Positions 1-38,426 of a stretch of 64,000 nt of DNA are shown here, one piece after another; position 1 is the stretch's first letter; the number at the start of each line of letters is the position of its first letter. The notes under the pieces were generated by a model. That model did not search any database. It was not told the DNA's origin and saw only the letters and a program-made list of their open reading frames with translations. Both the position numbers and the translations under genes were made by a program. Location of the stretch: the IMG/VR virus record IMGVR_UViG_3300043399_000877, positions 62,001 through 126,000 of that record; one strand, 5' to 3'.

Positions 1-2359
1 CTTCGATAGCATATGTTGCAGATTTGTCGGGATCTTCTTTTATTTTTTCTTCGCCTGCTGGTATCCTAACATCGAAATACTTTGCATATCTCATATAATT
101 GCGTGTATTTTTTGCTATAGCTGCTTCGCCCTTTTCAAATCTCTTACCCAGCACATGTATCGCATACCAGGTTGCCTCTTCTGAATCAGTTGCAAGTGCG
201 GCTTCGCCTTCGGGGAAACTGTGAGCATCATGATCGAACGTCTGCAAATAATATTTTGCAAGTCCAGCGTTGTCGGCAAAACGCATACGCATCTTTTTAA
301 AGTCATAACCGACATCAAAATACGCTGCACTCTCGGCGGCGTTCATTAGGTCACTTATTTTAGAATTTGGATCTTTTACCAGCTTATCTAGATTGTCTCG
401 AATTTCTTTCTTAACTGTTGGTGAAATACTTGCAAGTTTGGTAGCCCATTCTTTACTGCGCTTTATAAGTGCCATTTGCAATTTGGGTGATGCAAGTTCA
501 AGACTACCGTCTTCGTAGTCCCACACCCGCTGATTCTTGAGGTTCTTCTTAAACCAACGCTCGAATGCCACCCGGTCGTAAGACTTTCCGGGACCGATTT
601 GTTTTGGTAAAACTGGAGCATTTTCAGAGCGGTTGCGTTCGCTGTTGTATATTTTTTCAATTGGAACAATGTACTTCCCGGAAAAGAACACAGCCTGGTG
701 TGGTTCGTTGCTGTGTATAACACCGGCGCCCCGACTATCGGTTGCGTACTCGTACCCGAGTATTCGCATAATGCGATTCCATTCAACTGTTTTTTTAGGT
801 GCAGGCTTGCTGCGTCCTTTTTGCCATTCAGTGATCATGTTTTGTACTGGGTCTGCTGATTCTTTTATCTCAATTCCCATTGCTGCGGCTTTTGATATAA
901 ATTGTTCAACATCATCGGCTGAAACATTATCAGCTGGAAATGCTGCGTCAAGCTCAGCGTATGTTATAACTCCGGTTTGTTTGCCTTTTTTAAGTAACTC
1001 GTTCTTTTTGTCGACACCGGGTGCCGCCGGAGCGGCGGGGGTGTTGCCCAACGGTTCAAACTCAGTCTCCGGTGGTTCTGGTGCTGTTGGGGTGTTAGGT
1101 GCGTAATCCGGATTAGCTTTATAAAAGATCGCAAACGGTCGTTTTAACACGGTGCCATTTTCTTTATTTTTAAGAACAACACCATCCTTCTCGATACCGA
1201 TAACAGTAAAAAGTTTCTTGCCTTTTGGGCTGGTCGCGTTGGCATCATCACCGATTTTAAATTTTAATCCGGTTGTGTCTTTGACGTCGTTTCCGTAATC
1301 TTTGTTGGGATCATACAACTCAACATCTCCGTATGTTAAATCGAAGACCTCAGGGCCGTTATCCATGTCAATTTCTAAAGAACCCGATGATTTATATGCA
1401 TAAGAAACCGTTCCGGTTTTTTTATAATATTCATGACCGGGTTTTGTCACTATAACTTTATCACCATGGTGTATTAACTCCGTTTTTGGTAGGTTTTTTG
1501 GAGGCGCAGTCTTTTTCAGGTATTTGAGCGGTACCTCGATGTAATTGCTTTTAGGAGAACCAACCAAAGCCACTGATGCATGTGGCTGATCCATGTTATA
1601 GTCGTTGCCGTCAAAATGCATGCTCACAACCTTAGCCACAACTTTATCCGGTGCTTGGCTGTTGGACCAAGGTTTACTGTAATCCGTAAAAGCTGGGTTT
1701 ATTTCAACAAAATCACCCTTGCCAAAGTCGACCTTTATATCGCCCATTTTTTTCTTCTTGGCTAATTCCGCACCCATTACGCGAGTCACGTTCCACAACT
1801 TTGATATGTCAGGCCCGGCCTTGTCTTCTTCAAAACTAAATGCATTACTTAATGCTTCTTTTTCGATACGACTATATTCTTCTGGATCAAAGCCCTGTGA
1901 CGTCATATACTGACGCAATTTAGCCATATCGCGTTTGAACTGTTGTTCGGTATATCTTGCAATATCCAGTCCTGCATTGGCGTTACGCGGTGTAAACACC
2001 CATACGAACGGTAAGTCGCCCATGTATTCAACTGCGCTCGCATTACCGGTATTTTTAATTACTCTGAGAACATGCGATAGCGGATAGCTATAAACACCCA
2101 GGGGTGTATCGTATCCGCTGCGTGGGTTTACACCGATCTTTTCTATACCAGTGTAACTCACATAAAGGTCTTCCACCGGTGGATATGTTCTACCACGACT
2201 GTCAGATGATCCGGCCAACCGTTCGTATTTTAATAATTCTTCAGCAGTGTTTTCCTGATACTTTTTTAATTCATCATAATCTGCGGACCTCTGATCTAAT
2301 CTTGGTTGGCCCTTCTCACTGCGGCGGCGCTCTACAATTCGGATATCACGATATTTCAT
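1..2359 (-). CDS. Large late/virion-type protein, 3'-truncated by the window edge; ART-like scaffold with inserted KOW/SH3-like domains and a sigma70 region 1.1 domain, plus C-terminal helical repeats
   Basis: Not in the ORF track because it has no stop in the window. ATG at 2359 overlaps the upstream TGA. Manual translation: MKYRDIRIVERRRSEKG...YVSYTGIEKIGVNPRSGYDTPLGVYSYPL...WNRIMRILGYEY...IHSNEPHQAVFFS, paralogous to 2356..4968. Bases 860-1009 encode KKNELLKKGKQTGVITYAELDAAFPADNVSADDVEQFISKAAAMGIEIKE. Confidence 0.85.
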   Translation of the reverse strand, partial: MKYRDIRIVERRRSEKGQPRLDQRSADYDELKKYQENTAEELLKYERLAGSSDSRGRTYPPVEDLYVSYTGIEKIGVNPRSGYDTPLGVYSYPLSHVLRVIKNTGNASAVEYMGDLPFVWVFTPRNANAGLDIARYTEQQFKRDMAKLRQYMTSQGFDPEEYSRIEKEALSNAFSFEEDKAGPDISKLWNVTRVMGAELAKKKKMGDIKVDFGKGDFVEINPAFTDYSKPWSNSQAPDKVVAKVVSMHFDGNDYNMDQPHASVALVGSPKSNYIEVPLKYLKKTAPPKNLPKTELIHHGDKVIVTKPGHEYYKKTGTVSYAYKSSGSLEIDMDNGPEVFDLTYGDVELYDPNKDYGNDVKDTTGLKFKIGDDANATSPKGKKLFTVIGIEKDGVVLKNKENGTVLKRPFAIFYKANPDYAPNTPTAPEPPETEFEPLGNTPAAPAAPGVDKKNELLKKGKQTGVITYAELDAAFPADNVSADDVEQFISKAAAMGIEIKESADPVQNMITEWQKGRSKPAPKKTVEWNRIMRILGYEYATDSRGAGVIHSNEPHQAVFFSGKYIVPIEKIYNSERNRSENAPVLPKQIGPGKSYDRVAFERWFKKNLKNQRVWDYEDGSLELASPKLQMALIKRSKEWATKLASISPTVKKEIRDNLDKLVKDPNSKISDLMNAAESAAYFDVGYDFKKMRMRFADNAGLAKYYLQTFDHDAHSFPEGEAALATDSEEATWYAIHVLGKRFEKGEAAIAKNTRNYMRYAKYFDVRIPAGEEKIKEDPDKSATYAIE

Positions 2360-4968
2360 TGTTTGTATTTACCCACGTAATGTTTTAAATCTTGTACTTC
2401 AACTTCAGAATGATCACCATACACCCCATATGAAACTATTGCAACTCCGGGTTTCGGGAAAGACGTTATATAACCGGTAAACTTTTCAAGGCTGGTGCCA
2501 TCTCCCCACCAATCTGTGCTGAATTCAACAATATCCCCTAACGAGAAATTCGAAGGTTTTTTGTATGTAGATGAATTAAATTCAAAAACTTCACTAGCCT
2601 TTACTTTCAATGTTTTATTATTGATTAAAAATATATATTCGTAGCTCTCTTCGATGCCTACCAACATACCGGTATCACCGTTTTTGTTTACTTTGTATTT
2701 TTCACCCAACTTGAAACCATACCGATTTGGTTTTATTGGAGCGATAAATTCCGGTGCAGTCTCATCAAGTTCACCACCACGGTGCATGTCATGAATTTGA
2801 ATACGTTTGTTGTTCTCGGGAGTATTAGCTATCATTACAAGTTTCTGTAAACCGCTCATAACTTCTGCATACATGTCTCCGGGTTTAAACTTGCTCAGGT
2901 CATCATATAACGGAAACTTTTTCCTATATCTACGAATGGCCGAGGACTTCAACGCCATAACATCTTCGGCCTCCGGCCAAGGGCGTTGAAGAACGTTGAT
3001 TGCGTAATCTGCCGCATTGTCAGGACTTAGTTGAATTTGTGGTTCGCCCTTGGGGAATGCTTCATGCAAGACGTTGGCTGCATAATTATATGCGGTTTCC
3101 GGGTCTTTACTGATAGCCTCCTCGCCAGCCGGCCAAGGTTTACGCAAAATACGAGAAGCATACCTGTATGCTCGCCATGAATCATCGGCTATGGCAGATT
3201 CGGCGGCCGGCCACGGCCCCTTCTTTATCTGCTCTATGTATTCCATGATATGTTTGGGGTTTTTCAAAAACGCTTCGTCGGACACTTGTATGTCTTTAGG
3301 GTCACCGGTGTAAGCACTTTCCAAATCACGTATAGCTCGGTTAATGTCATATTCATCTTCGCCGCTGTTTACTAACTTGGCCAAACGATTTGCCTTGGCC
3401 TTTACCACAAGGTAACCGTATTTGCTGCTGGCGCCGTCGATTATGGACAACCAAAGGTCGTTGTCTACCACCAACTTATTAATAAGTTTTTCTGATTGTA
3501 TCTTAACAGTATCCGAATACAGTCCATGTATTTGGTCGTAGTTCTTGTAATGCACTTTTAACCAACGTTCAAATGTTATCGGGTCGTATTTTCCGCTGTT
3601 TATTTGATCAGTTGTATAAGGTGGTCTCACTCTGATATTTCTCGCAGTATTGCGAATCTTGCCGATAGGGGTAAAATAGGCACCGGATAGGAATACAGCC
3701 TGTGTTTCTTCACTGGGATGGATTAGTCCGCTGTCATTACGATCTACGATGAAATCATACCCGGCGACTCTCATCAAACGGTTCCATTCGATAATACTGG
3801 TCTTGGCTCTGGTATTTAAGTTGCTTTCTTCGCGTATTATGGATTCTTTTGGAAATGTAAAATATGGGTCTGGTTCCGGTTCAAATTCTAAATCATCAAT
3901 AACATCAAAATCTACAATATTATCATCAGAGGCGTCGGGTTCTTTTTTTGGTTCAGCGGCCGGTGATTTTAGCACTTTTAAGTATTCTGGTGGCAAGTCC
4001 TTTACTTTCGTCGCTTTTCCAAATATACTGATGCTGAGTTCGAAGGTTTGCCCGACTTTGTTTACAACCTCGCCTTCAAATCCTTCAAACGGTCCCTTGA
4101 CAACCTCAACAGTGTCACCAATTTTAGGCATAGCCTCTATATTAAAAGAGGGTTTCGATTTTTCGGCAGGAACATAATCTACCGGAACGCTTGTTTTTTT
4201 TAAATCGTTCAACGGAAGGCCCTGTAATGGGTAACTGTTAAAATTACCAGATCCCGAATATATTTTTACATCAGCAGTGGTTTCAGTTTTGGTTACCACC
4301 ATCCCCACAGTGTCGCTCCAACCGGTGTACTCGGGTAATTCAACAAAGTCACCCAGTTTTATATTGGAGGGGCCGGAGATTTTCGAAGCGTTTTTAAAAC
4401 TTCCAAAGTCTTTGCCTAACACTCGAGTTGCATTCCAGAACATAGACGCATATATGGTTGAGCCACTGGTTTGTTTGGCTGATGACCAAGCTTCTTGTAT
4501 TTTCTGATCGATAAACTCTTCAGTCAATCCCTGTTTTGATAAGAAAGATCTGATCTTTTCCATATCCTCAAGAAGCTGTTCTTCCGTATAGGTCGCAAGT
4601 TCCAATCCGCGTTCGGGATTCTTAGGTGTAAACAACCAAATATACGGTTGCTTGCCCATATACGGAACGTCACTCGGGTCATTAGATGCCTTCATACGCT
4701 TCAAAGCATATTCAAGAGGATAGCAATAAACACCGATAGGAGTATTATACCCGCTCACTGGATTGATGCCAATTTTGTCTAATCCAGTATAGCTTATATA
4801 CAGGTCGCGCATATCTATACCTGAGTCAAGGGCCATACGTTCCAAATCTTTTACAGCGTTTTCACGAAACTGATCTAAATCATCACTGCTGGCCCTGTCT
4901 TTGTGAACTCTGGGTACACCTTTTTCGCTTCTGCGACGTTCTACAATTAATAAATCACGATATCTCAT
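2356..4968 (-). CDS. Large late/virion-type paralog; ART-like scaffold with an inserted NusG-CTD-like KOW domain, helical repeats and C-terminal KOW/SH3-like domains
   Basis: 887-aa ORF; probable start MRYRDLLIVE at 4968, just downstream of TGATAAATAC. Contains IGDTVEVVKGPFEGFEGEV...SISIFGKATKV and WPxxExxIxxDxxxAYxYA repeats. Confidence 0.85.
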   Translation of the reverse strand: MRYRDLLIVERRRSEKGVPRVHKDRASSDDLDQFRENAVKDLERMALDSGIDMRDLYISYTGLDKIGINPVSGYNTPIGVYCYPLEYALKRMKASNDPSDVPYMGKQPYIWLFTPKNPERGLELATYTEEQLLEDMEKIRSFLSKQGLTEEFIDQKIQEAWSSAKQTSGSTIYASMFWNATRVLGKDFGSFKNASKISGPSNIKLGDFVELPEYTGWSDTVGMVVTKTETTADVKIYSGSGNFNSYPLQGLPLNDLKKTSVPVDYVPAEKSKPSFNIEAMPKIGDTVEVVKGPFEGFEGEVVNKVGQTFELSISIFGKATKVKDLPPEYLKVLKSPAAEPKKEPDASDDNIVDFDVIDDLEFEPEPDPYFTFPKESIIREESNLNTRAKTSIIEWNRLMRVAGYDFIVDRNDSGLIHPSEETQAVFLSGAYFTPIGKIRNTARNIRVRPPYTTDQINSGKYDPITFERWLKVHYKNYDQIHGLYSDTVKIQSEKLINKLVVDNDLWLSIIDGASSKYGYLVVKAKANRLAKLVNSGEDEYDINRAIRDLESAYTGDPKDIQVSDEAFLKNPKHIMEYIEQIKKGPWPAAESAIADDSWRAYRYASRILRKPWPAGEEAISKDPETAYNYAANVLHEAFPKGEPQIQLSPDNAADYAINVLQRPWPEAEDVMALKSSAIRRYRKKFPLYDDLSKFKPGDMYAEVMSGLQKLVMIANTPENNKRIQIHDMHRGGELDETAPEFIAPIKPNRYGFKLGEKYKVNKNGDTGMLVGIEESYEYIFLINNKTLKVKASEVFEFNSSTYKKPSNFSLGDIVEFSTDWWGDGTSLEKFTGYITSFPKPGVAIVSYGVYGDHSEVEVQDLKHYVGKYKQ

Positions 4969-4990
4969 TATAGTTCCCAAATTAGTTAGT

Positions 4991-5000
4991 GTATTTATCA
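4991..5000 (-). promoter_or_regulatory. Putative late promoter (TGATAAATAC)
   Basis: T4 late-like ATAAATA about 25 nt upstream of the ATG. The same motif precedes 5361..7697, the GIY-YIG gene, 51400..52170, the tRNA-Arg/endonuclease unit and the 63803 gene. Confidence 0.65.
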
Positions 5001-5065
5001 ACACAGGCTTGACAAGCACCTTTGTTGACGTTAGTATATGCTAGACCCCGCTGTTGGTATATCAT

Positions 5066-13374: not shown

Positions 13375-13451
13375 GGGGGATTAGCTCAATTGGTTAGAGC
13401 GCCGGACTCATAATCCGTAGGTTGCTGGTTCAAGTCCTGCATCCCCTACCA
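13375..13451 (+). tRNA. tRNA with CAT anticodon, probably Ile2 (lysidine type) rather than Met
   Basis: Cloverleaf: GGGGGAT/ATCCCCT acceptor stem, CT-CAT-AA loop, TTCAAGT T-loop, encoded CCA. The T arm resembles that of bacterial Ile2. Confidence 0.9.
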
Positions 13452-13455
13452 AAAT

Positions 13456-13538
13456 GGCCCCGTGGTGGAATGGTAGACACTGAAGACTTAAAATCTTCTG
13501 CCAATGGCGTGCCGGTTCGAGTCCGGCCGGGGCTACCA
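13456..13538 (+). tRNA. tRNA-Leu(TAA)
   Basis: GGCCCCG/CGGGGCT acceptor stem, CT-TAA-AA loop, long variable arm, encoded CCA. Confidence 0.93.
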
Positions 13539-13623
13539 TGTCTTTGACGATCACATCAGTCTTCGACGGAGGATCTTCAAAATAAAGTAAATATTGAAGC
13601 CCGTGGTGTGATCTTCTAAGACA
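13539..13623 (+). ncRNA. Candidate structured small RNA within the tRNA cluster
   Basis: TGTCTT/AAGACA and GATCACATCA/TGGTGTGATC closing helices, with an internal CTTCAA/TTGAAG hairpin. Confidence 0.4.
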
Positions 13624-13626
13624 TTC

Positions 13627-13656
13627 GGTTCCTTAGCTCAGCTGGATAGAGCAACT
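13627..13656 (+). pseudogene. 5' remnant of a tRNA (Arg-like)
   Basis: GGTTCCTTAGCTCAGCTGGATAGAGCAACT gives the 5' acceptor strand and D arm, then breaks off into GATAAATAC. Confidence 0.75.
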
Positions 13657-13674
13657 AGATAAATACTTTAAGAC

Positions 13675-13749
13675 GCCTCCGTGGTGAAAGGGATATCACA
13701 CGGGTCTTCTAAACCCAGGTTAGAGGTTCGAATCCTCTCGGGGGCGCCA
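13675..13749 (+). tRNA. tRNA-Arg(TCT)
   Basis: GCCTCCG/CGGGGGC acceptor stem, CT-TCT-AA loop, AGAGG-TTCGAAT-CCTCT T arm, encoded CCA. Confidence 0.9.
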
Positions 13750-26948: not shown

Positions 26949-27171
26949 CCGACAAAGCCGTTGACACGGCCAGGAAGACTTGCTAGACAAGGCAAGTAAA
27001 CAGAAACGCTAACGGTTCAACAGAGGATACGATGCCCCGACCTCGAGACTCGCCCTAGCCGGGCATGCCAGAGACGCCCTGGAATAATTAGATAAAATTT
27101 TAGATTGATGGAGGTCCTGGGTATGACCGCCGCTTAAAAACTGCCCAACCCTCGCAACAAGGAGCCAAATA

Positions 27172-27222
27172 TGGGAACCAGGTCAATGATCGGTGTCCGC
27201 AACACGGACGGAACCATCACCA
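27172..27222 (+). pseudogene. Truncated 5' copy of gene 27977..28432
   Basis: AAGGAG SD followed by MGTRSMIGVRNTDGTIT, versus MGTRGMIGIKNADGTID in the intact copy. Confidence 0.8.
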
Positions 27223-27888
27223 TTTGACTTTACCGCGACCCTGAATAAAATCCGGTCCCGGTTGATTAACGCTCCGTATGCACTGAACTCCGTTGTTCCA
27301 CCATTTTAGTTTGGAAACACCTTCCGAGTTCTTTTTTCGCCAGTCAGCATCTTGATTGATGCCTTTGTTTATACCTACAATTTCCCCAGTATTCCATCTT
27401 GGATCATTTGGTGATACTTTTATTTTTTCACCTGTTGATACTAGCTTTGCTGGTATTGAAGTAAATTCCGGATTGCGATTTTGTTTGCGTCCCTTTTGTG
27501 ATGGTGGAGATATTCCTAAAAGCAAATTTCGATCTCTTACTTTTTGTTTTGCTTCTTCATTCCATCCCCTATTTCCGTCACCACCGTCTGTTTGGTTTGT
27601 TAGGACGCCGGTCCCCAAATCCCGTCTACCATAAGTCGATATAAGTTCTATCTCAAGGCCAGTGGCTTGTTCACGAGTAAGGTTGTTGTGAACTATCTCG
27701 ATTAAAGGATCTTTTCCTTCTTCTAATAGTTTTCGAATTGCGTTGAGTTTGTGTTGGCCCGACTCGGGAATTGGATTTAGTTTTGCCTCTTTTAAGTGAG
27801 CAAATCGACGACGACCTTTACCCATTCCTACATAAAAGGGTTCTAGCGTGTCAGGGTTTCGATATAGGTATGTATAATAATTGTTCAT
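27217..27888 (-). mobile_element. GIY-YIG family homing endonuclease gene
   Basis: YYTYLYRNP..PFYVGMGKGRRRFAH..EIELISTYGR..LTNQTDGGDG and C-terminal KWWNNG motif. AT-rich, opposite strand to neighbours, with a GATAAATAC promoter just upstream. Confidence 0.85.
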
Positions 27889-27976
27889 ATTGTATTTATC
27901 GAACAATTATTTTTCGGATGGCTACTTGACAATAGGCGCTGGTTGCGCTATACACTAGGAAACAAAGGAGACACAC

Positions 27977-36699: not shown

Positions 36700-36787
36700 A
36701 CCGGTTCTGGGTTCGGGACTGATTGAACTGACACTATAACTGGGGCTGGCAGGGTTGTCAAGCCCCAGTTAATCCATTTTCTGATAT

Positions 36788-36846
36788 AGGTCTTTTCACT
36801 CAGACCTCCGTGCCCTCCCCTCCCGGCGCTCCTAAGCCGGTCGTCC
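36788..36846 (-). ncRNA. Candidate small RNA, copy 1
   Basis: Minus-strand TTGACA(36880-36875)-N17-TAGACA promoter; two hairpins joined by GAGGGGAGGGCACGG; covaries with copy 2. Confidence 0.65.
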
Positions 36847-37066
36847 AGTCCTGTCTAGCATATGCTGTCGGGCGTGTCAATAGGAAAAAAGTCGGTTTTC
36901 TATAAAAAACCTCTTGCAATGCTGGCCGGCCTCCGCTATAAGGGTGGAGTGTTGAGGATGATGCGACAGACGGTGCTGCAAAATAAAACGCCGTAAACGC
37001 AAAAAAACACTTGACACTGTCCAAACCCCGCGTTATACATAACGCACCGCAACAAGGAGCAAGGCA

Positions 37067-37603
37067 ATGAGCGTTAACAATAACTTTTCGGTCGTCGGCG
37101 TGTCGCGTCAGTTCGGCAAACTGAAGATCCGTATGGCGAACGACCGTGCGTGGCGTGAGTTCATGCTGACCAAAGAGGGTCACGTGGATATCCAGCTGCT
37201 GGACCTCGGCACTGTGATGCCCAAGGAACGGGCGATCGAGCTGGCGATGGCTGCAACTGCCATCCAGGAGGACGGCTCGCTGGCGCCGGTGTTTGGCGAA
37301 GAAGCGCAGGAGGTGTTCCGCGCTTACTTGATCAGCAAGGGCATCATCGAGCGCCCGAAGCGCAAGCGCGGCCGCCCGGCGAAGGCTGCTGACGAGCCCG
37401 TGACGAGCGAGGCTGAGGCGCCCCAGCAGGAGCCCGTGGCTGAGCTGCCCGAGCAGGAGACGCCCGCTGAAGAGCCCGCAGCGCCGGCGCTGACCGTGGA
37501 CGACATGCCCAAACGCGACGAGAAAGGCCGGCTGCTGAGCCGTGCGGCGCGTGAGGCGCTGCTGGCGGAGCGGCTGGGGGTGACGGAGGGGGAGGTGGCG
37601 TAA
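37067..37603 (+). CDS. AT-hook DNA-binding protein with acidic/Pro-rich tail, paralog A
   Basis: PKRKRGRPAK; aligns with 37992..38426. Confidence 0.8.
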   Translation: MSVNNNFSVVGVSRQFGKLKIRMANDRAWREFMLTKEGHVDIQLLDLGTVMPKERAIELAMAATAIQEDGSLAPVFGEEAQEVFRAYLISKGIIERPKRKRGRPAKAADEPVTSEAEAPQQEPVAELPEQETPAEEPAAPALTVDDMPKRDEKGRLLSRAAREALLAERLGVTEGEVA

Positions 37604-37629
37604 GCCCCAACCCACCGACATAACACAAC

Positions 37630-37670
37630 AGGACAGCGGTGTCAAGCGCCGCTGTCCTTTTTCTTTCTGT
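37630..37670 (+). terminator. Rho-independent terminator
   Basis: AGGACAGCGG...CCGCTGTCCT followed by TTTTCTTT. Confidence 0.8.
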
Positions 37671-37678
37671 TCTTCAGT

Positions 37679-37737
37679 AGATCTTTTCAGGCAGACCTCC
37701 GTGCCCTCCCCTCCGGGTGCTAGTAAACCCGTCGTCC
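37679..37737 (-). ncRNA. Candidate small RNA, copy 2
   Basis: Minus-strand TTGACA(37771-37766)-N17-TAGACA promoter; same architecture as copy 1, with compensatory changes. Confidence 0.65.
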
Positions 37738-37991
37738 AGTTCTGTCTAGCAGATCGTCAGGGCCATGTCAATAACAAAAAGTTCGGTTTTTCTATAAAAA
37801 AGCTGTTGACTTGCTGGCCAGGGTTCAGTATAAGGACGGCATGGAAGCAACGAAACACGGACGACGCTGCAAAGCAACGCTGCACAAAATAAATGCGCTG
37901 GCAATGCAAACTGTCCTAAATTAGTTGTTGACATATTGAACCCCAGGTGCTATACAGACAGCACTGCAACACACAGAGAGAGGACTACAAG

Positions 37992-38426
37992 ATGACCAAG
38001 ATTTACAACGCCGCCGGTGTTTCCCGTGTCCGTGCTGACCAGCCGTTCAAGCTGCGTATGGCCACCGACATCGAATGGCGCCGGTTCGACCTGGCCCGCG
38101 GGCAGCACGTGGATGTGACGCTGGTCACGCTGCCCGAGTCGATGGACAAGATCCAGGCTGTCCAGTTCCTGCAGACGGCGCCGGAGTTTGTGGACAACGC
38201 CGAAGCGCAGGCCGTGTTCACTGCCTACTTGATGAGCAAGGGCGTGATCGAAAAGCCCAAGAAGAAGCGCGGCCGCCCGGCCAAGGCGAAGGTGGAGGAG
38301 GCTGCTGGCACCGAGGCGCCGGCTGCTGACGGGCTCGGCGACGAGCTGGTTGACGCTGCTGCCGAGACGCCGGCCGTGCAGGCGGTGGTGGAAGAGAACA
38401 CCGCCGAGTTCGAGCCCGAGCACTGA
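37992..38426 (+). CDS. AT-hook DNA-binding protein with acidic tail, paralog B
   Basis: PKKKRGRPAK; shares GVSR..K.RMA.D..WR.F.L...HVD...EAQ.VF.AYL.SKG.IE with paralog A. Confidence 0.8.
   Translation: MTKIYNAAGVSRVRADQPFKLRMATDIEWRRFDLARGQHVDVTLVTLPESMDKIQAVQFLQTAPEFVDNAEAQAVFTAYLMSKGVIEKPKKKRGRPAKAKVEEAAGTEAPAADGLGDELVDAAAETPAVQAVVEENTAEFEPEH

What the first reader, a model, noticed from the sequence alone, without database searches (positions are those of the whole stretch)
36788..37771. Duplicated ~60-nt small RNA with compensatory base changes and an invariant SD-like G-rich linker
Seen: two copies, each behind a minus-strand TTGACA-N17-TAGACA promoter. Hairpin 1 is CCGGC/GCCGG in copy 1 and CGGGT/ACCCG in copy 2 (two compensatory pairs, different loops). 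The linker GAGGGGAGGGCACGG is identical. Hairpin 2 is AGGTCT/AGACCT versus AGGTCT/AGATCT (G-U tolerated). Established: CCUCC is the 16S anti-SD, and CCUCCUCCC is the loop motif of alphaproteobacterial cuckoo/CcsR sRNAs. Inference: an undescribed phage sRNA acting as a sponge for CCUCC-type host sRNAs or as a ribosome anti-SD decoy.
Basis: partly seen in the sequence, partly recalled or inferred. Interest (0 to 1): 0.8.

Follow-up and report, generated by a model that had tools for sequence, protein, structure and literature searches.

The report
Multi-copy small RNA of jumbo phages
The two repeats are copies of a previously undescribed, strongly conserved small-RNA gene that uncultured freshwater and wastewater jumbo phages carry several times between their early genes; its partner and function are unknown, and the proposed "ribosome/anti-SD decoy" role is not supported by the family-wide conservation.

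Summary
Both copies have TTGACA-N17-TGC-TAGACA, a 5-bp hairpin with two compensatory pairs, an identical 15-nt linker and a second hairpin. The window belongs to a 382-kb IMG/VR jumbo-phage contig distantly related to PA5oct, Atu_ph07 and Phosso. I found about 37 distinct further copies in roughly 20 related metagenome contigs, 2 to 5 or more per contig. All are antisense to the early genes. All have a promoter spacer of exactly 17 nt and exactly 11 nt from the -10 to hairpin 1. Hairpin 1 co-varies: 94% of cells are paired against 78% in shuffles (0 of 500 reach it). Its G·U pairs fit the minus strand only. A 21-25-nt block (GUANGGGAGGGCACGGAGGUCUGAC) is nearly invariant, while flanking proteins are only 47-73% identical. 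The RNA probably ends at the terminator shared with the upstream gene, giving about 115 nt, not 60. There is no Rfam match and no copy in 185,000 genomes or in deposited phages. Transcription could not be shown. GGA motifs are not enriched, so it is not a Csr/Rsm-type sponge either. Best reading: sibling trans-acting sRNAs whose invariant, mostly unpaired core recognises an unidentified host partner.

The parts
36875..36880 (-). copy 1: -35 hexamer TTGACA
   Evidence: TTGAC is conserved in all 32 copies, always with a 17-nt spacer
36852..36860 (-). copy 1: extended -10, TGC-TAGACA; predicted TSS near 36845
36823..36840 (-). copy 1: hairpin 1 (CCGGC, 8-nt loop, GCCGG); starts exactly 11 nt after the -10
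36802..36822 (-). copy 1: invariant purine-rich core (linker plus 5' arm of hairpin 2)
   Evidence: mean P(unpaired) of the linker is 0.68
36788..36807 (-). copy 1: hairpin 2 (AGGTCT, 8-nt loop, AGACCT)
36737..36771 (-). copy 1: hairpin of the bidirectional terminator shared with the + strand 169-aa gene; probable 3' end of the RNA near 36731
37766..37771 (-). copy 2: -35 hexamer TTGACA
37743..37751 (-). copy 2: extended -10, TGC-TAGACA; predicted TSS near 37736
37714..37731 (-). copy 2: hairpin 1 (CGGGT, 8-nt loop, ACCCG)
37693..37713 (-). copy 2: invariant purine-rich core
37679..37698 (-). copy 2: hairpin 2 (AGGTCT, 8-nt loop, AGATCT, one G.U)
37631..37657 (-). copy 2: hairpin of the bidirectional terminator shared with the + strand AT-hook gene 37067-37603; probable 3' end of the RNA near 37622
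36914..36942 (+). divergent + strand promoter (TTGCAA-N17-TATAAG) of AT-hook gene 1; it shares the A/T-rich spacer with the copy 1 promoter
   Evidence: (repeat D3)
37806..37834 (+). divergent + strand promoter (TTGACT-N17-TATAAG) of AT-hook gene 2
37067..37603 (+). AT-hook protein paralog 1 (178 aa). It is context only, being part of the ~891-nt tandem duplication that carries the two RNA copies
37947..38426 (+). AT-hook protein paralog 2 (ORF listed from GTG 37947; the ATG preceded by a ribosome-binding site lies about 45 nt further in)

Best explanation
The two repeats are sibling copies of a small non-coding RNA gene of about 115 nt that is specific to one clade of uncultured jumbo phages. 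Inferred: each copy is its own transcription unit. The host sigma-70 RNA polymerase starts at TTGAC-N17-(TG)n-TA(G/T)A.., about 4-5 nt before a 5' hairpin. It transcribes antisense to the surrounding early genes and stops at the hairpin that also terminates the upstream + strand gene. Shown by comparison: the promoter geometry, hairpin 1 as a minus-strand RNA structure, and a 21-25-nt nearly invariant purine-rich segment that is predicted to be mostly unpaired. Inferred: the RNA acts in trans, and the invariant segment is its recognition element for a conserved partner that is not encoded in the sampled phage DNA. The partner is most likely a host RNA bound by base-pairing, or else a host or phage RNA-binding protein. 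Having 2 to 5 or more gene copies per genome would raise the dose early in infection. The confidence given is for the trans-acting mechanism; that this is a real RNA gene family I rate at about 0.8.
For: Family and context: nhmmer found 44 hits in all 15 syntenic loci, always antisense to the genes. The metagenome scan added more copies. A covariance model recovers the same set, with a clean gap and only 2 copies in the window. Promoter: 32 of 32 copies have TTGAC, a spacer of exactly 17 nt with variable sequence, a TA.... hexamer, and exactly 11 nt to hairpin 1; this holds for all 37 distinct copies. RNA structure and strand: hairpin 1 is paired in 94.3% of cells against 78.4% in shuffles (0 of 500), has 30 double-sided changes against 7.3 expected (0 of 500), and falls to 23-48% pairing when the partner is slid. 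It shows 81 Watson-Crick pairs, 5 G.U and 0 A.C. The neighbouring terminator stems show the opposite bias, with 33 plus-strand-type G.U against 9. Non-coding: hairpin 1 ranges from 11 to 19 nt in total, so no reading frame is preserved, and small ORFs after the SD-like motif differ in start codon, frame and length. Constraint: 19 of the 21 positions of GAGGGCACGGAGGUCUGAC are identical in at least 35 of 37 copies, while the flanking proteins are 47-73% identical. Accessibility: P(unpaired) of the linker is 0.55-0.68 against 0.46 for the whole RNA. No phage-encoded target: 9-mer complements occur at chance level, and the best duplex in the window is no better than for shuffled cores. Precedent: the closest cultured relative, PA5oct, relies on host RNAP and makes abundant ncRNAs of unknown function.
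Against: No transcript has been seen. The only RNA-labelled runs are assembled contigs without strand information, and the tool flags them as possibly DNA. The -10 lacks the canonical final T. The terminator is tuned to the + strand and has only a modest U-tract on the minus strand, so the 3' end is uncertain. Hairpin 2 is heterogeneous (stems of 2-10 bp, no strand bias). No partner has been identified and the host is unknown. An invariant core cannot show covariation, so RNA-level and DNA-level constraint on the core itself cannot be told apart.
Confidence: 0.48

Rival explanations
1. One reading: the RNA is a decoy carrying Shine-Dalgarno-like GGAGG elements. It would soak up host sRNAs with CCUCC-type loops (cuckoo/CcsR), or the 3' end of 16S rRNA.
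For: The core contains GGGAGGG and GGAGGU, both SD-like. Cuckoo RNAs display CCUCCUCCC in their loops and are multi-copy in alphaproteobacteria (PMC4615179). Relatives of this phage infect Agrobacterium and Sinorhizobium as well as Pseudomonas. Phage-encoded anti-sRNAs that mimic an mRNA target are known, for example AgvB (PMC4104026).
Against: The additional GGAGG of the window is not conserved. Duplex energies of the family core with CCUCCUCCC (-12.8 kcal/mol) or a 16S tail (-11.5) are matched by 13-27% of shuffled cores and are weaker than a standard SD (-16.7). Such pairing does not explain the invariant GCAC and GUCUGAC. Titrating ribosomes with an sRNA is stoichiometrically demanding.
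Confidence: 0.12
2. A protein sponge of the Csr/Rsm type: the core offers a high-affinity GGA site for a CsrA/RsmA-family translational repressor and titrates it.
For: The invariant GCACGGAGGU fits the CANGGANG-U part of the RsmE/RsmA consensus (A/U)CANGGANG(U/A). It can fold as GGGC[ACGGAG]GUCU, the only consensus pairs RNAalifold returned on the naive alignment. A second GGA lies 9 nt upstream. Rsm sRNAs can be multi-copy.
Against: GGA motifs are not enriched (3.30 per RNA against 3.10 in shuffles; 1.2 outside the core), whereas repeated GGA motifs in loops are described as essential for Rsm sponges (PMC4353343). Once a GGAGG is given, the consensus match adds only two extra bases. Two copies have lost the second GGA. 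The mini-hairpin competes with hairpin 2. No Rfam Csr/Rsm model matches. The 21-25 nt of invariance is far more than CsrA sites normally show.
Confidence: 0.12
3. A cis-acting nascent-RNA or promoter-proximal element. The structured leader would modify or pause RNA polymerase (as HK022 put RNA does), or act as an attenuator with the terminator, to control antisense transcription into the upstream early gene. Alternatively the convergent unit simply insulates neighbouring early genes.
For: The spacing between promoter and hairpin 1 is rigid. Two hairpins lie directly behind a promoter and before a terminator. Everything downstream is antisense to early genes. Further minus-strand promoter-like sites are embedded in the terminators.
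Against: The terminators are tuned to the + strand. No conserved antiterminator pairing was seen in the folds. Simple insulation would not need an invariant 25-mer or a covarying hairpin.
Confidence: 0.12
4. A DNA-level site. The invariant 25-mer would be a binding site for a phage or host DNA-binding protein (operator, roadblock, iteron-like), or a G-rich R-loop-forming origin primer region.
For: An invariant sequence gives no covariation, so the strand and molecule under selection are not determined for the core itself. In L017/L018 the 9-mer GGGCACGGA recurs in an inverted repeat that brackets the -10 of three + strand promoters, which looks like an operator.
Against: The adjacent hairpin 1 is clearly selected as a minus-strand RNA structure. 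The copies are about 900 nt apart, all in one orientation and each locked to a promoter, unlike iterons. The half-site spacing differs from that of the L017 palindrome.
Confidence: 0.07

Closest known systems
Phage-encoded anti-sRNAs AgvB and AsxR of EHEC Stx prophages (PMC4104026)
   Same: These are short RNAs encoded by phage DNA, with their own promoter and terminator, and they occur in several copies.
   Different: Those are prophage genes of a known host with a known partner (GcvB, FnrS). Here the phage is a large lytic-type jumbo phage, there is no sequence similarity, the partner is unknown, and pairing with the proposed partner class is no better than chance.
Cuckoo / CcsR sibling sRNAs of alphaproteobacteria (PMC4615179)
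   Same: Both are multi-copy sibling RNAs in which only a short motif is conserved while the hairpin stems vary through compensatory changes. The motif relates to the SD/anti-SD pair.
   Different: Cuckoo RNAs show the pyrimidine motif CCUCCUCCC in every hairpin loop. This family carries a purine-rich motif once, between hairpins, and it is phage-encoded. It is not a member.
Csr/Rsm protein-sponge sRNAs (CsrB, RsmX/Y/Z; PMC4353343, PMC6849547)
   Same: Both are small and multi-copy in some species. The core matches the CANGGANG binding consensus and could present GGA in a hexaloop.
   Different: The defining repeated GGA motifs in loops are absent. No Rfam model matches. Sequence invariance extends far beyond a GGA site.
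HK022 put RNA (from memory; not checked in a paper here)
   Same: It also has two stem-loops transcribed just downstream of an early promoter and is present in two copies per phage.
   Different: put acts in cis on the polymerase to read through terminators into downstream genes. Here nothing but antisense sequence lies downstream, and the hairpins are separated by a 15-nt invariant linker.
ncRNA001-004 of the related jumbo phage PA5oct (PMC7318152)
   Same: These are non-coding transcripts of a related, host-RNAP-dependent jumbo phage. Two are very abundant from early infection, and their function is unknown.
   Different: They are 236-619 nt, on the coding strand and single-copy. The covariance model and a motif search find nothing like this element in PA5oct 1-30 kb.

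Membership tests
Generic bacterial/phage small-RNA gene (own promoter, structure, terminator) | Promoter conserved in position and geometry | tested here: met
   TTGAC-N17-TA.... in all 37 distinct copies, with a variable spacer sequence and 11 nt to hairpin 1
Generic bacterial/phage small-RNA gene (own promoter, structure, terminator) | Secondary structure supported by covariation on the proposed strand | tested here: met
   Hairpin 1. Hairpin 2 is only partly supported.
Generic bacterial/phage small-RNA gene (own promoter, structure, terminator) | Intrinsic terminator downstream | tested here: inconclusive
   A stable hairpin is always present, but it is tuned to the + strand and has a weak minus-strand U-tract.
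Generic bacterial/phage small-RNA gene (own promoter, structure, terminator) | A discrete transcript is observed | tested here: inconclusive
   The RNA-labelled runs are contigs, possibly DNA, without strand information.
Any Rfam 15 family | Covariance-model match | tested here: not met
   Only tRNAs reach the gathering score. With E up to 10, only weak hits on the terminator appear.
Csr/Rsm protein-sponge sRNAs | Repeated GGA motifs, several in hairpin loops | tested here: not met
   3.30 GGA per RNA against 3.10 in shuffles, and 1.2 outside the core
Csr/Rsm protein-sponge sRNAs | A site matching (A/U)CANGGANG(U/A) | tested here: met
   GCACGGAGGU is present in 35 of 37 copies. This is weak evidence, because GGAGG already satisfies most of the motif.
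Csr/Rsm protein-sponge sRNAs | Binds CsrA/RsmA of the host | not testable with these tools
   The host is unknown, and a binding assay would be needed.
Cuckoo / CcsR sRNAs | 2-4 adjacent hairpins, each with CCUCCUCCC in the loop | tested here: not met
   No such loop exists; the conserved motif is purine-rich and lies between the hairpins.
Anti-sRNA / target-mimic sponge (AgvB type) | Specific complementarity to the seed of a host sRNA | tested here: inconclusive
   Against the one proposed seed (CCUCCUCCC), pairing is no better than for shuffles. Other host sRNAs cannot be tested without knowing the host.
put-type cis-acting antiterminator RNA | Makes the transcribing polymerase read through downstream terminators | not testable with these tools
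   Only the anatomy could be compared.

The most novel reading that the evidence does not exclude
Jumbo phages of this clade flood the cell early in infection with a multi-copy RNA that mimics a ribosome-binding site. This RNA would titrate a host global post-transcriptional regulator (a CsrA-like protein, an anti-SD-type sRNA family, or the 30S subunit itself). That would be an RNA-based takeover of host translation control by a lytic phage.
Probability: 0.2. Interest if true: 0.85.

Novelty: new variant of a known kind. Interest (0 to 1): 0.62.

Why it matters
Almost all characterised phage sRNAs come from prophages of model bacteria, and a 2025 review of phage-derived sRNAs does not mention jumbo phages at all. 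This element is an RNA family defined purely by comparison. It has better evolutionary support than many accepted sRNAs, it occurs in several copies per genome in widespread freshwater and wastewater jumbo phages, and its recognition sequence is more conserved than the neighbouring proteins. If it is a trans-acting regulator or decoy, it would point to a conserved host vulnerability that these phages exploit early in infection. It would also provide a ready covariance model for annotating large-phage genomes. The contrast between the minus-strand-biased hairpin 1 and the plus-strand-biased terminators also shows how strand of action can be assigned from G.U/A.C asymmetry alone.

Tried and rejected
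1. Rfam, at gathering score and at E up to 10: nothing apart from tRNAs and weak terminator hits.
2. DNA and protein searches of the locus against deposited phages: no match.
3. Exact-core scan of 185,579 species genomes: 11 hits, all chance matches inside coding sequence without promoter or hairpin context.
4. RNA evidence: the two RNA-labelled metagenome runs are contigs, flagged as possibly DNA, with no strand information.
5. RNAalifold on plain MAFFT alignments failed because loop-length variation misaligned the stems. This was solved by anchoring the sequences at the -10 and at the core.
6. Small-peptide reading: GTG in copy 1, CTG in copy 2, ATG, TTG or none in relatives; frames and lengths differ. 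Rejected.
7. Phage-encoded pairing target: 9-mer complements occur at chance level, and duplex energies equal those of shuffled cores.
8. Csr/Rsm sponge: no GGA enrichment.
9. Alternative pairing CCGU/ACGG around the G-rich stretch: not kept in the window's lineage or in L008 (read).
10. The third TGCTAGACA promoter, at 26961-26989: no element follows it.
11. The distant megaphage locus L003 and PA5oct 1-30 kb: no copy.
12. The AT-hook neighbour as an RNA-binding partner: the N-terminal domain models confidently but has no known fold match and is not Sm-like. RNA copies also sit next to unrelated genes in L017.

Full report
**What is in the window.** The window is part of IMGVR_UViG_3300043399_000877, a 382-kb viral contig from a freshwater metagenome. 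It encodes rIIA, a tRNA nucleotidyltransferase, three tRNAs and DnaB- and UvsW-like helicases. Its closest deposited relatives, at 51-56% identity on the two helicases, are the PA5oct-like Pseudomonas jumbo phages, Agrobacterium phage Atu_ph07 and Sinorhizobium phage Phosso. The finding lies in a 50-61% GC block of small + strand genes, flanked by 37-43% GC sequence.

- The two copies belong to an ~891-nt tandem duplication. It also duplicated a gene for a protein with an AT-hook (37067-37603 and 37947-38426).
- The non-coding block is 81% identical over 113 nt, while the two proteins are only 38% identical.
- The genes are on the + strand, so each copy sits in an intergenic region with a fixed layout. 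Reading along the minus strand, the order is:
  - the + strand promoter of the downstream gene;
  - a shared A/T-rich spacer;
  - the divergent minus-strand promoter;
  - an 11-nt leader, then hairpin 1;
  - the 15-nt linker, then hairpin 2;
  - an A-rich stretch;
  - the hairpin that terminates the upstream + strand gene.
- The A-rich stretch is simply the complement of that terminator's U-tract.
- Hairpin 2 has no U-tract after it, so the predicted RNA runs to the shared terminator and is about 115 nt.

**Relatives.** The AT-hook protein has 59 homologues of 95-44% identity in metagenomes. I fetched 15 syntenic loci.

- A profile of the two window copies found the element in every locus, always antisense to the genes, in 2-5 copies per locus and sometimes in tandem.
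- One scan of the metagenome collection with the invariant 19-mer added more contigs and a fourth copy type.
- This gives 37 distinct copies with full context. A covariance model (R1) recovers the same set at 44.7 bits or more for full copies. It finds two copies in the window, none in a distant megaphage locus and none in PA5oct 1-30 kb.
- The motif is absent from 185,579 species-representative genomes; 11 chance matches lie inside genes. It is also absent from deposited phages and from Rfam.

**Evidence that it is a minus-strand RNA gene.**

1. Promoter geometry is rigid. All copies have TTGAC, a spacer of exactly 17 nt with unconserved sequence, a TA.... hexamer usually preceded by TG, and exactly 11 nt to the first paired base of hairpin 1.
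2. Hairpin 1 always ends 5 nt before the core and uses at least ten different arm sequences.
   - On an alignment anchored at both ends (A3), 94.3% of cells pair against 78.4% in shuffles (0 of 500).
   - There are 30 cells with changes on both sides against 7.3 expected (0 of 500).
   - Sliding the partner drops pairing to 23-48%.
3. Strand. Hairpin 1 has G.U but no A.C pairs (81 Watson-Crick, 5 G.U, 0 A.C). The terminator stems a few dozen nucleotides away show the reverse (33 A.C on the minus strand, which are G.U on the plus strand, against 9). The terminators therefore serve the + strand mRNAs first, and hairpin 1 serves a minus-strand RNA.
4. It is not coding. Hairpin 1 varies from 11 to 19 nt, and possible start codons, frames and lengths after the SD-like motif differ between copies.
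5. Hairpin 2 is weaker evidence. Its 5' arm lies in the invariant core and its 3' arm changes register. Stems range from 2 to 10 bp with no strand bias.

**The invariant core.** GUANGGGAGGGCACGGAGGUCUGAC is nearly invariant; 19 of the last 21 positions are identical in at least 35 of 37 copies. The flanking proteins, by contrast, are 47-73% identical. In the folds of the two window copies the linker is more accessible than the rest of the RNA.

**Transcription.** It could not be shown. The only RNA-labelled runs holding the region are assembled contigs that cross whole genes and promoters. The tool flags them as possibly DNA, and they carry no strand information.

**Testing the mechanisms.**

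However, the additional GGAGG is lineage-specific, and pairing of the family core with CCUCCUCCC or a 16S tail is matched by 13-27% of shuffled cores. Such pairing also leaves GCAC and GUCUGAC unexplained.
- *Csr/Rsm sponge.* The core matches CANGGANG and could form a GGA hexaloop hairpin. But GGA motifs are not enriched, so the family's defining feature is missing.
- *Pairing with phage RNAs.* No complement beyond chance was found in the window or the loci.
- *Cis-acting or DNA-level roles.* These remain possible but explain less.

I therefore favour sibling trans-acting sRNAs whose core recognises a conserved host partner, most likely by base-pairing. The existence of the gene family I rate at about 0.8. 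The trans-acting mechanism I rate at about 0.45-0.5.

**Comparison and novelty.** The family works most like sibling sRNA families and phage anti-sRNAs (AgvB), but it is a member of none of the families tested. PA5oct, the nearest studied phage, depends on host RNAP and makes abundant unexplained ncRNAs, but these are unrelated. This is a new RNA family of a known general kind, in an unusual setting: lytic-type jumbo phages, several promoter-locked copies interleaved antisense between early genes.

Noticed in passing
window 36733-36761 (-) and 37618-37646 (-); same positions in relatives: The loops of the terminators behind copy types a and b hold a conserved TTGACA, with a TA.... hexamer exactly 17 nt later on the minus strand (TATAGT, TATGTC, TACGCT, TAGTAT and others). 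The stems around them vary. These look like further promoters that would make RNA antisense to the 3' ends of the early genes.
   Followed up: partly
L017 2113-2150, 2313-2352, 2589-2628 (and L018): Three + strand promoters carry an inverted repeat TCCGTGCCC / GGGCACGGA that brackets the -10. The second arm is identical to 9 nt of the RNA core and would be the 5' end of the mRNAs; the first arm is a 10-nt complement of the core. This is seen only in this lineage. It may be an operator, a shared protein-binding motif or a lineage-specific target.
   Followed up: partly
window 26961-27170 (+): A third TTGACA-N17-TGCTAGACA promoter on the + strand is followed by about 180 nt of non-coding sequence and a short truncated ORF. 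A lower-GC stretch with a 229-aa minus-strand ORF (27217-27906) comes next and looks inserted.
   Followed up: no
window 1-64000: There is a strong GC mosaic within one phage contig: about 43% (1-10 kb), 50-61% (10-50 kb, small + strand early-type genes) and about 37% (50-64 kb, minus-strand replication genes).
   Followed up: no
window 37067-37603 and 37947-38426 (+): The paralogous early proteins have a confidently modelled N-terminal alpha/beta domain (pLDDT about 95, residues 6-95) with no match to any solved structure. This is followed by a KRKRGRPAK AT-hook and an acidic tail. They may bind the A/T-rich spacers between the divergent promoters.
   Followed up: partly
L009 1505-1799, L010 735-1029, L016 3515-3809: Two complete RNA units stand in tandem in one intergenic region. 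The first ends at a minimal AAAAGGCCUUUUU hairpin directly before the next unit's -35.
   Followed up: partly
L012 339-743, L016 115-522: Relatives encode a ribosomal protein L7/L12-like gene (PF00542) about 3 kb upstream of the RNA copies. Together with the tRNAs and the CCA-adding enzyme in the window, this shows investment in translation.
   Followed up: no
window 13375-13749 (+): [quoted passage not shown] The same three anticodons appear in the tRNA set listed for PA5oct (PMC7318152).
   Followed up: no
window 2356-5019 (-): An 887-aa protein has a weak local match (E 2.8e-07, residues 293-348) to a PHROG annotated as a transcription antiterminator. This could matter for the cis-acting rival explanation.
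   Followed up: no
window 37575-37600 (+): The last codons of AT-hook gene 1 read ACGGAGGGGGAGG, which nearly repeats the window's G-rich linker on the opposite strand. A minus-strand transcript through it would complement the RNA core with one bulge. The equivalent position before copy 1 lacks it, so it is probably coincidence.
   Followed up: partly
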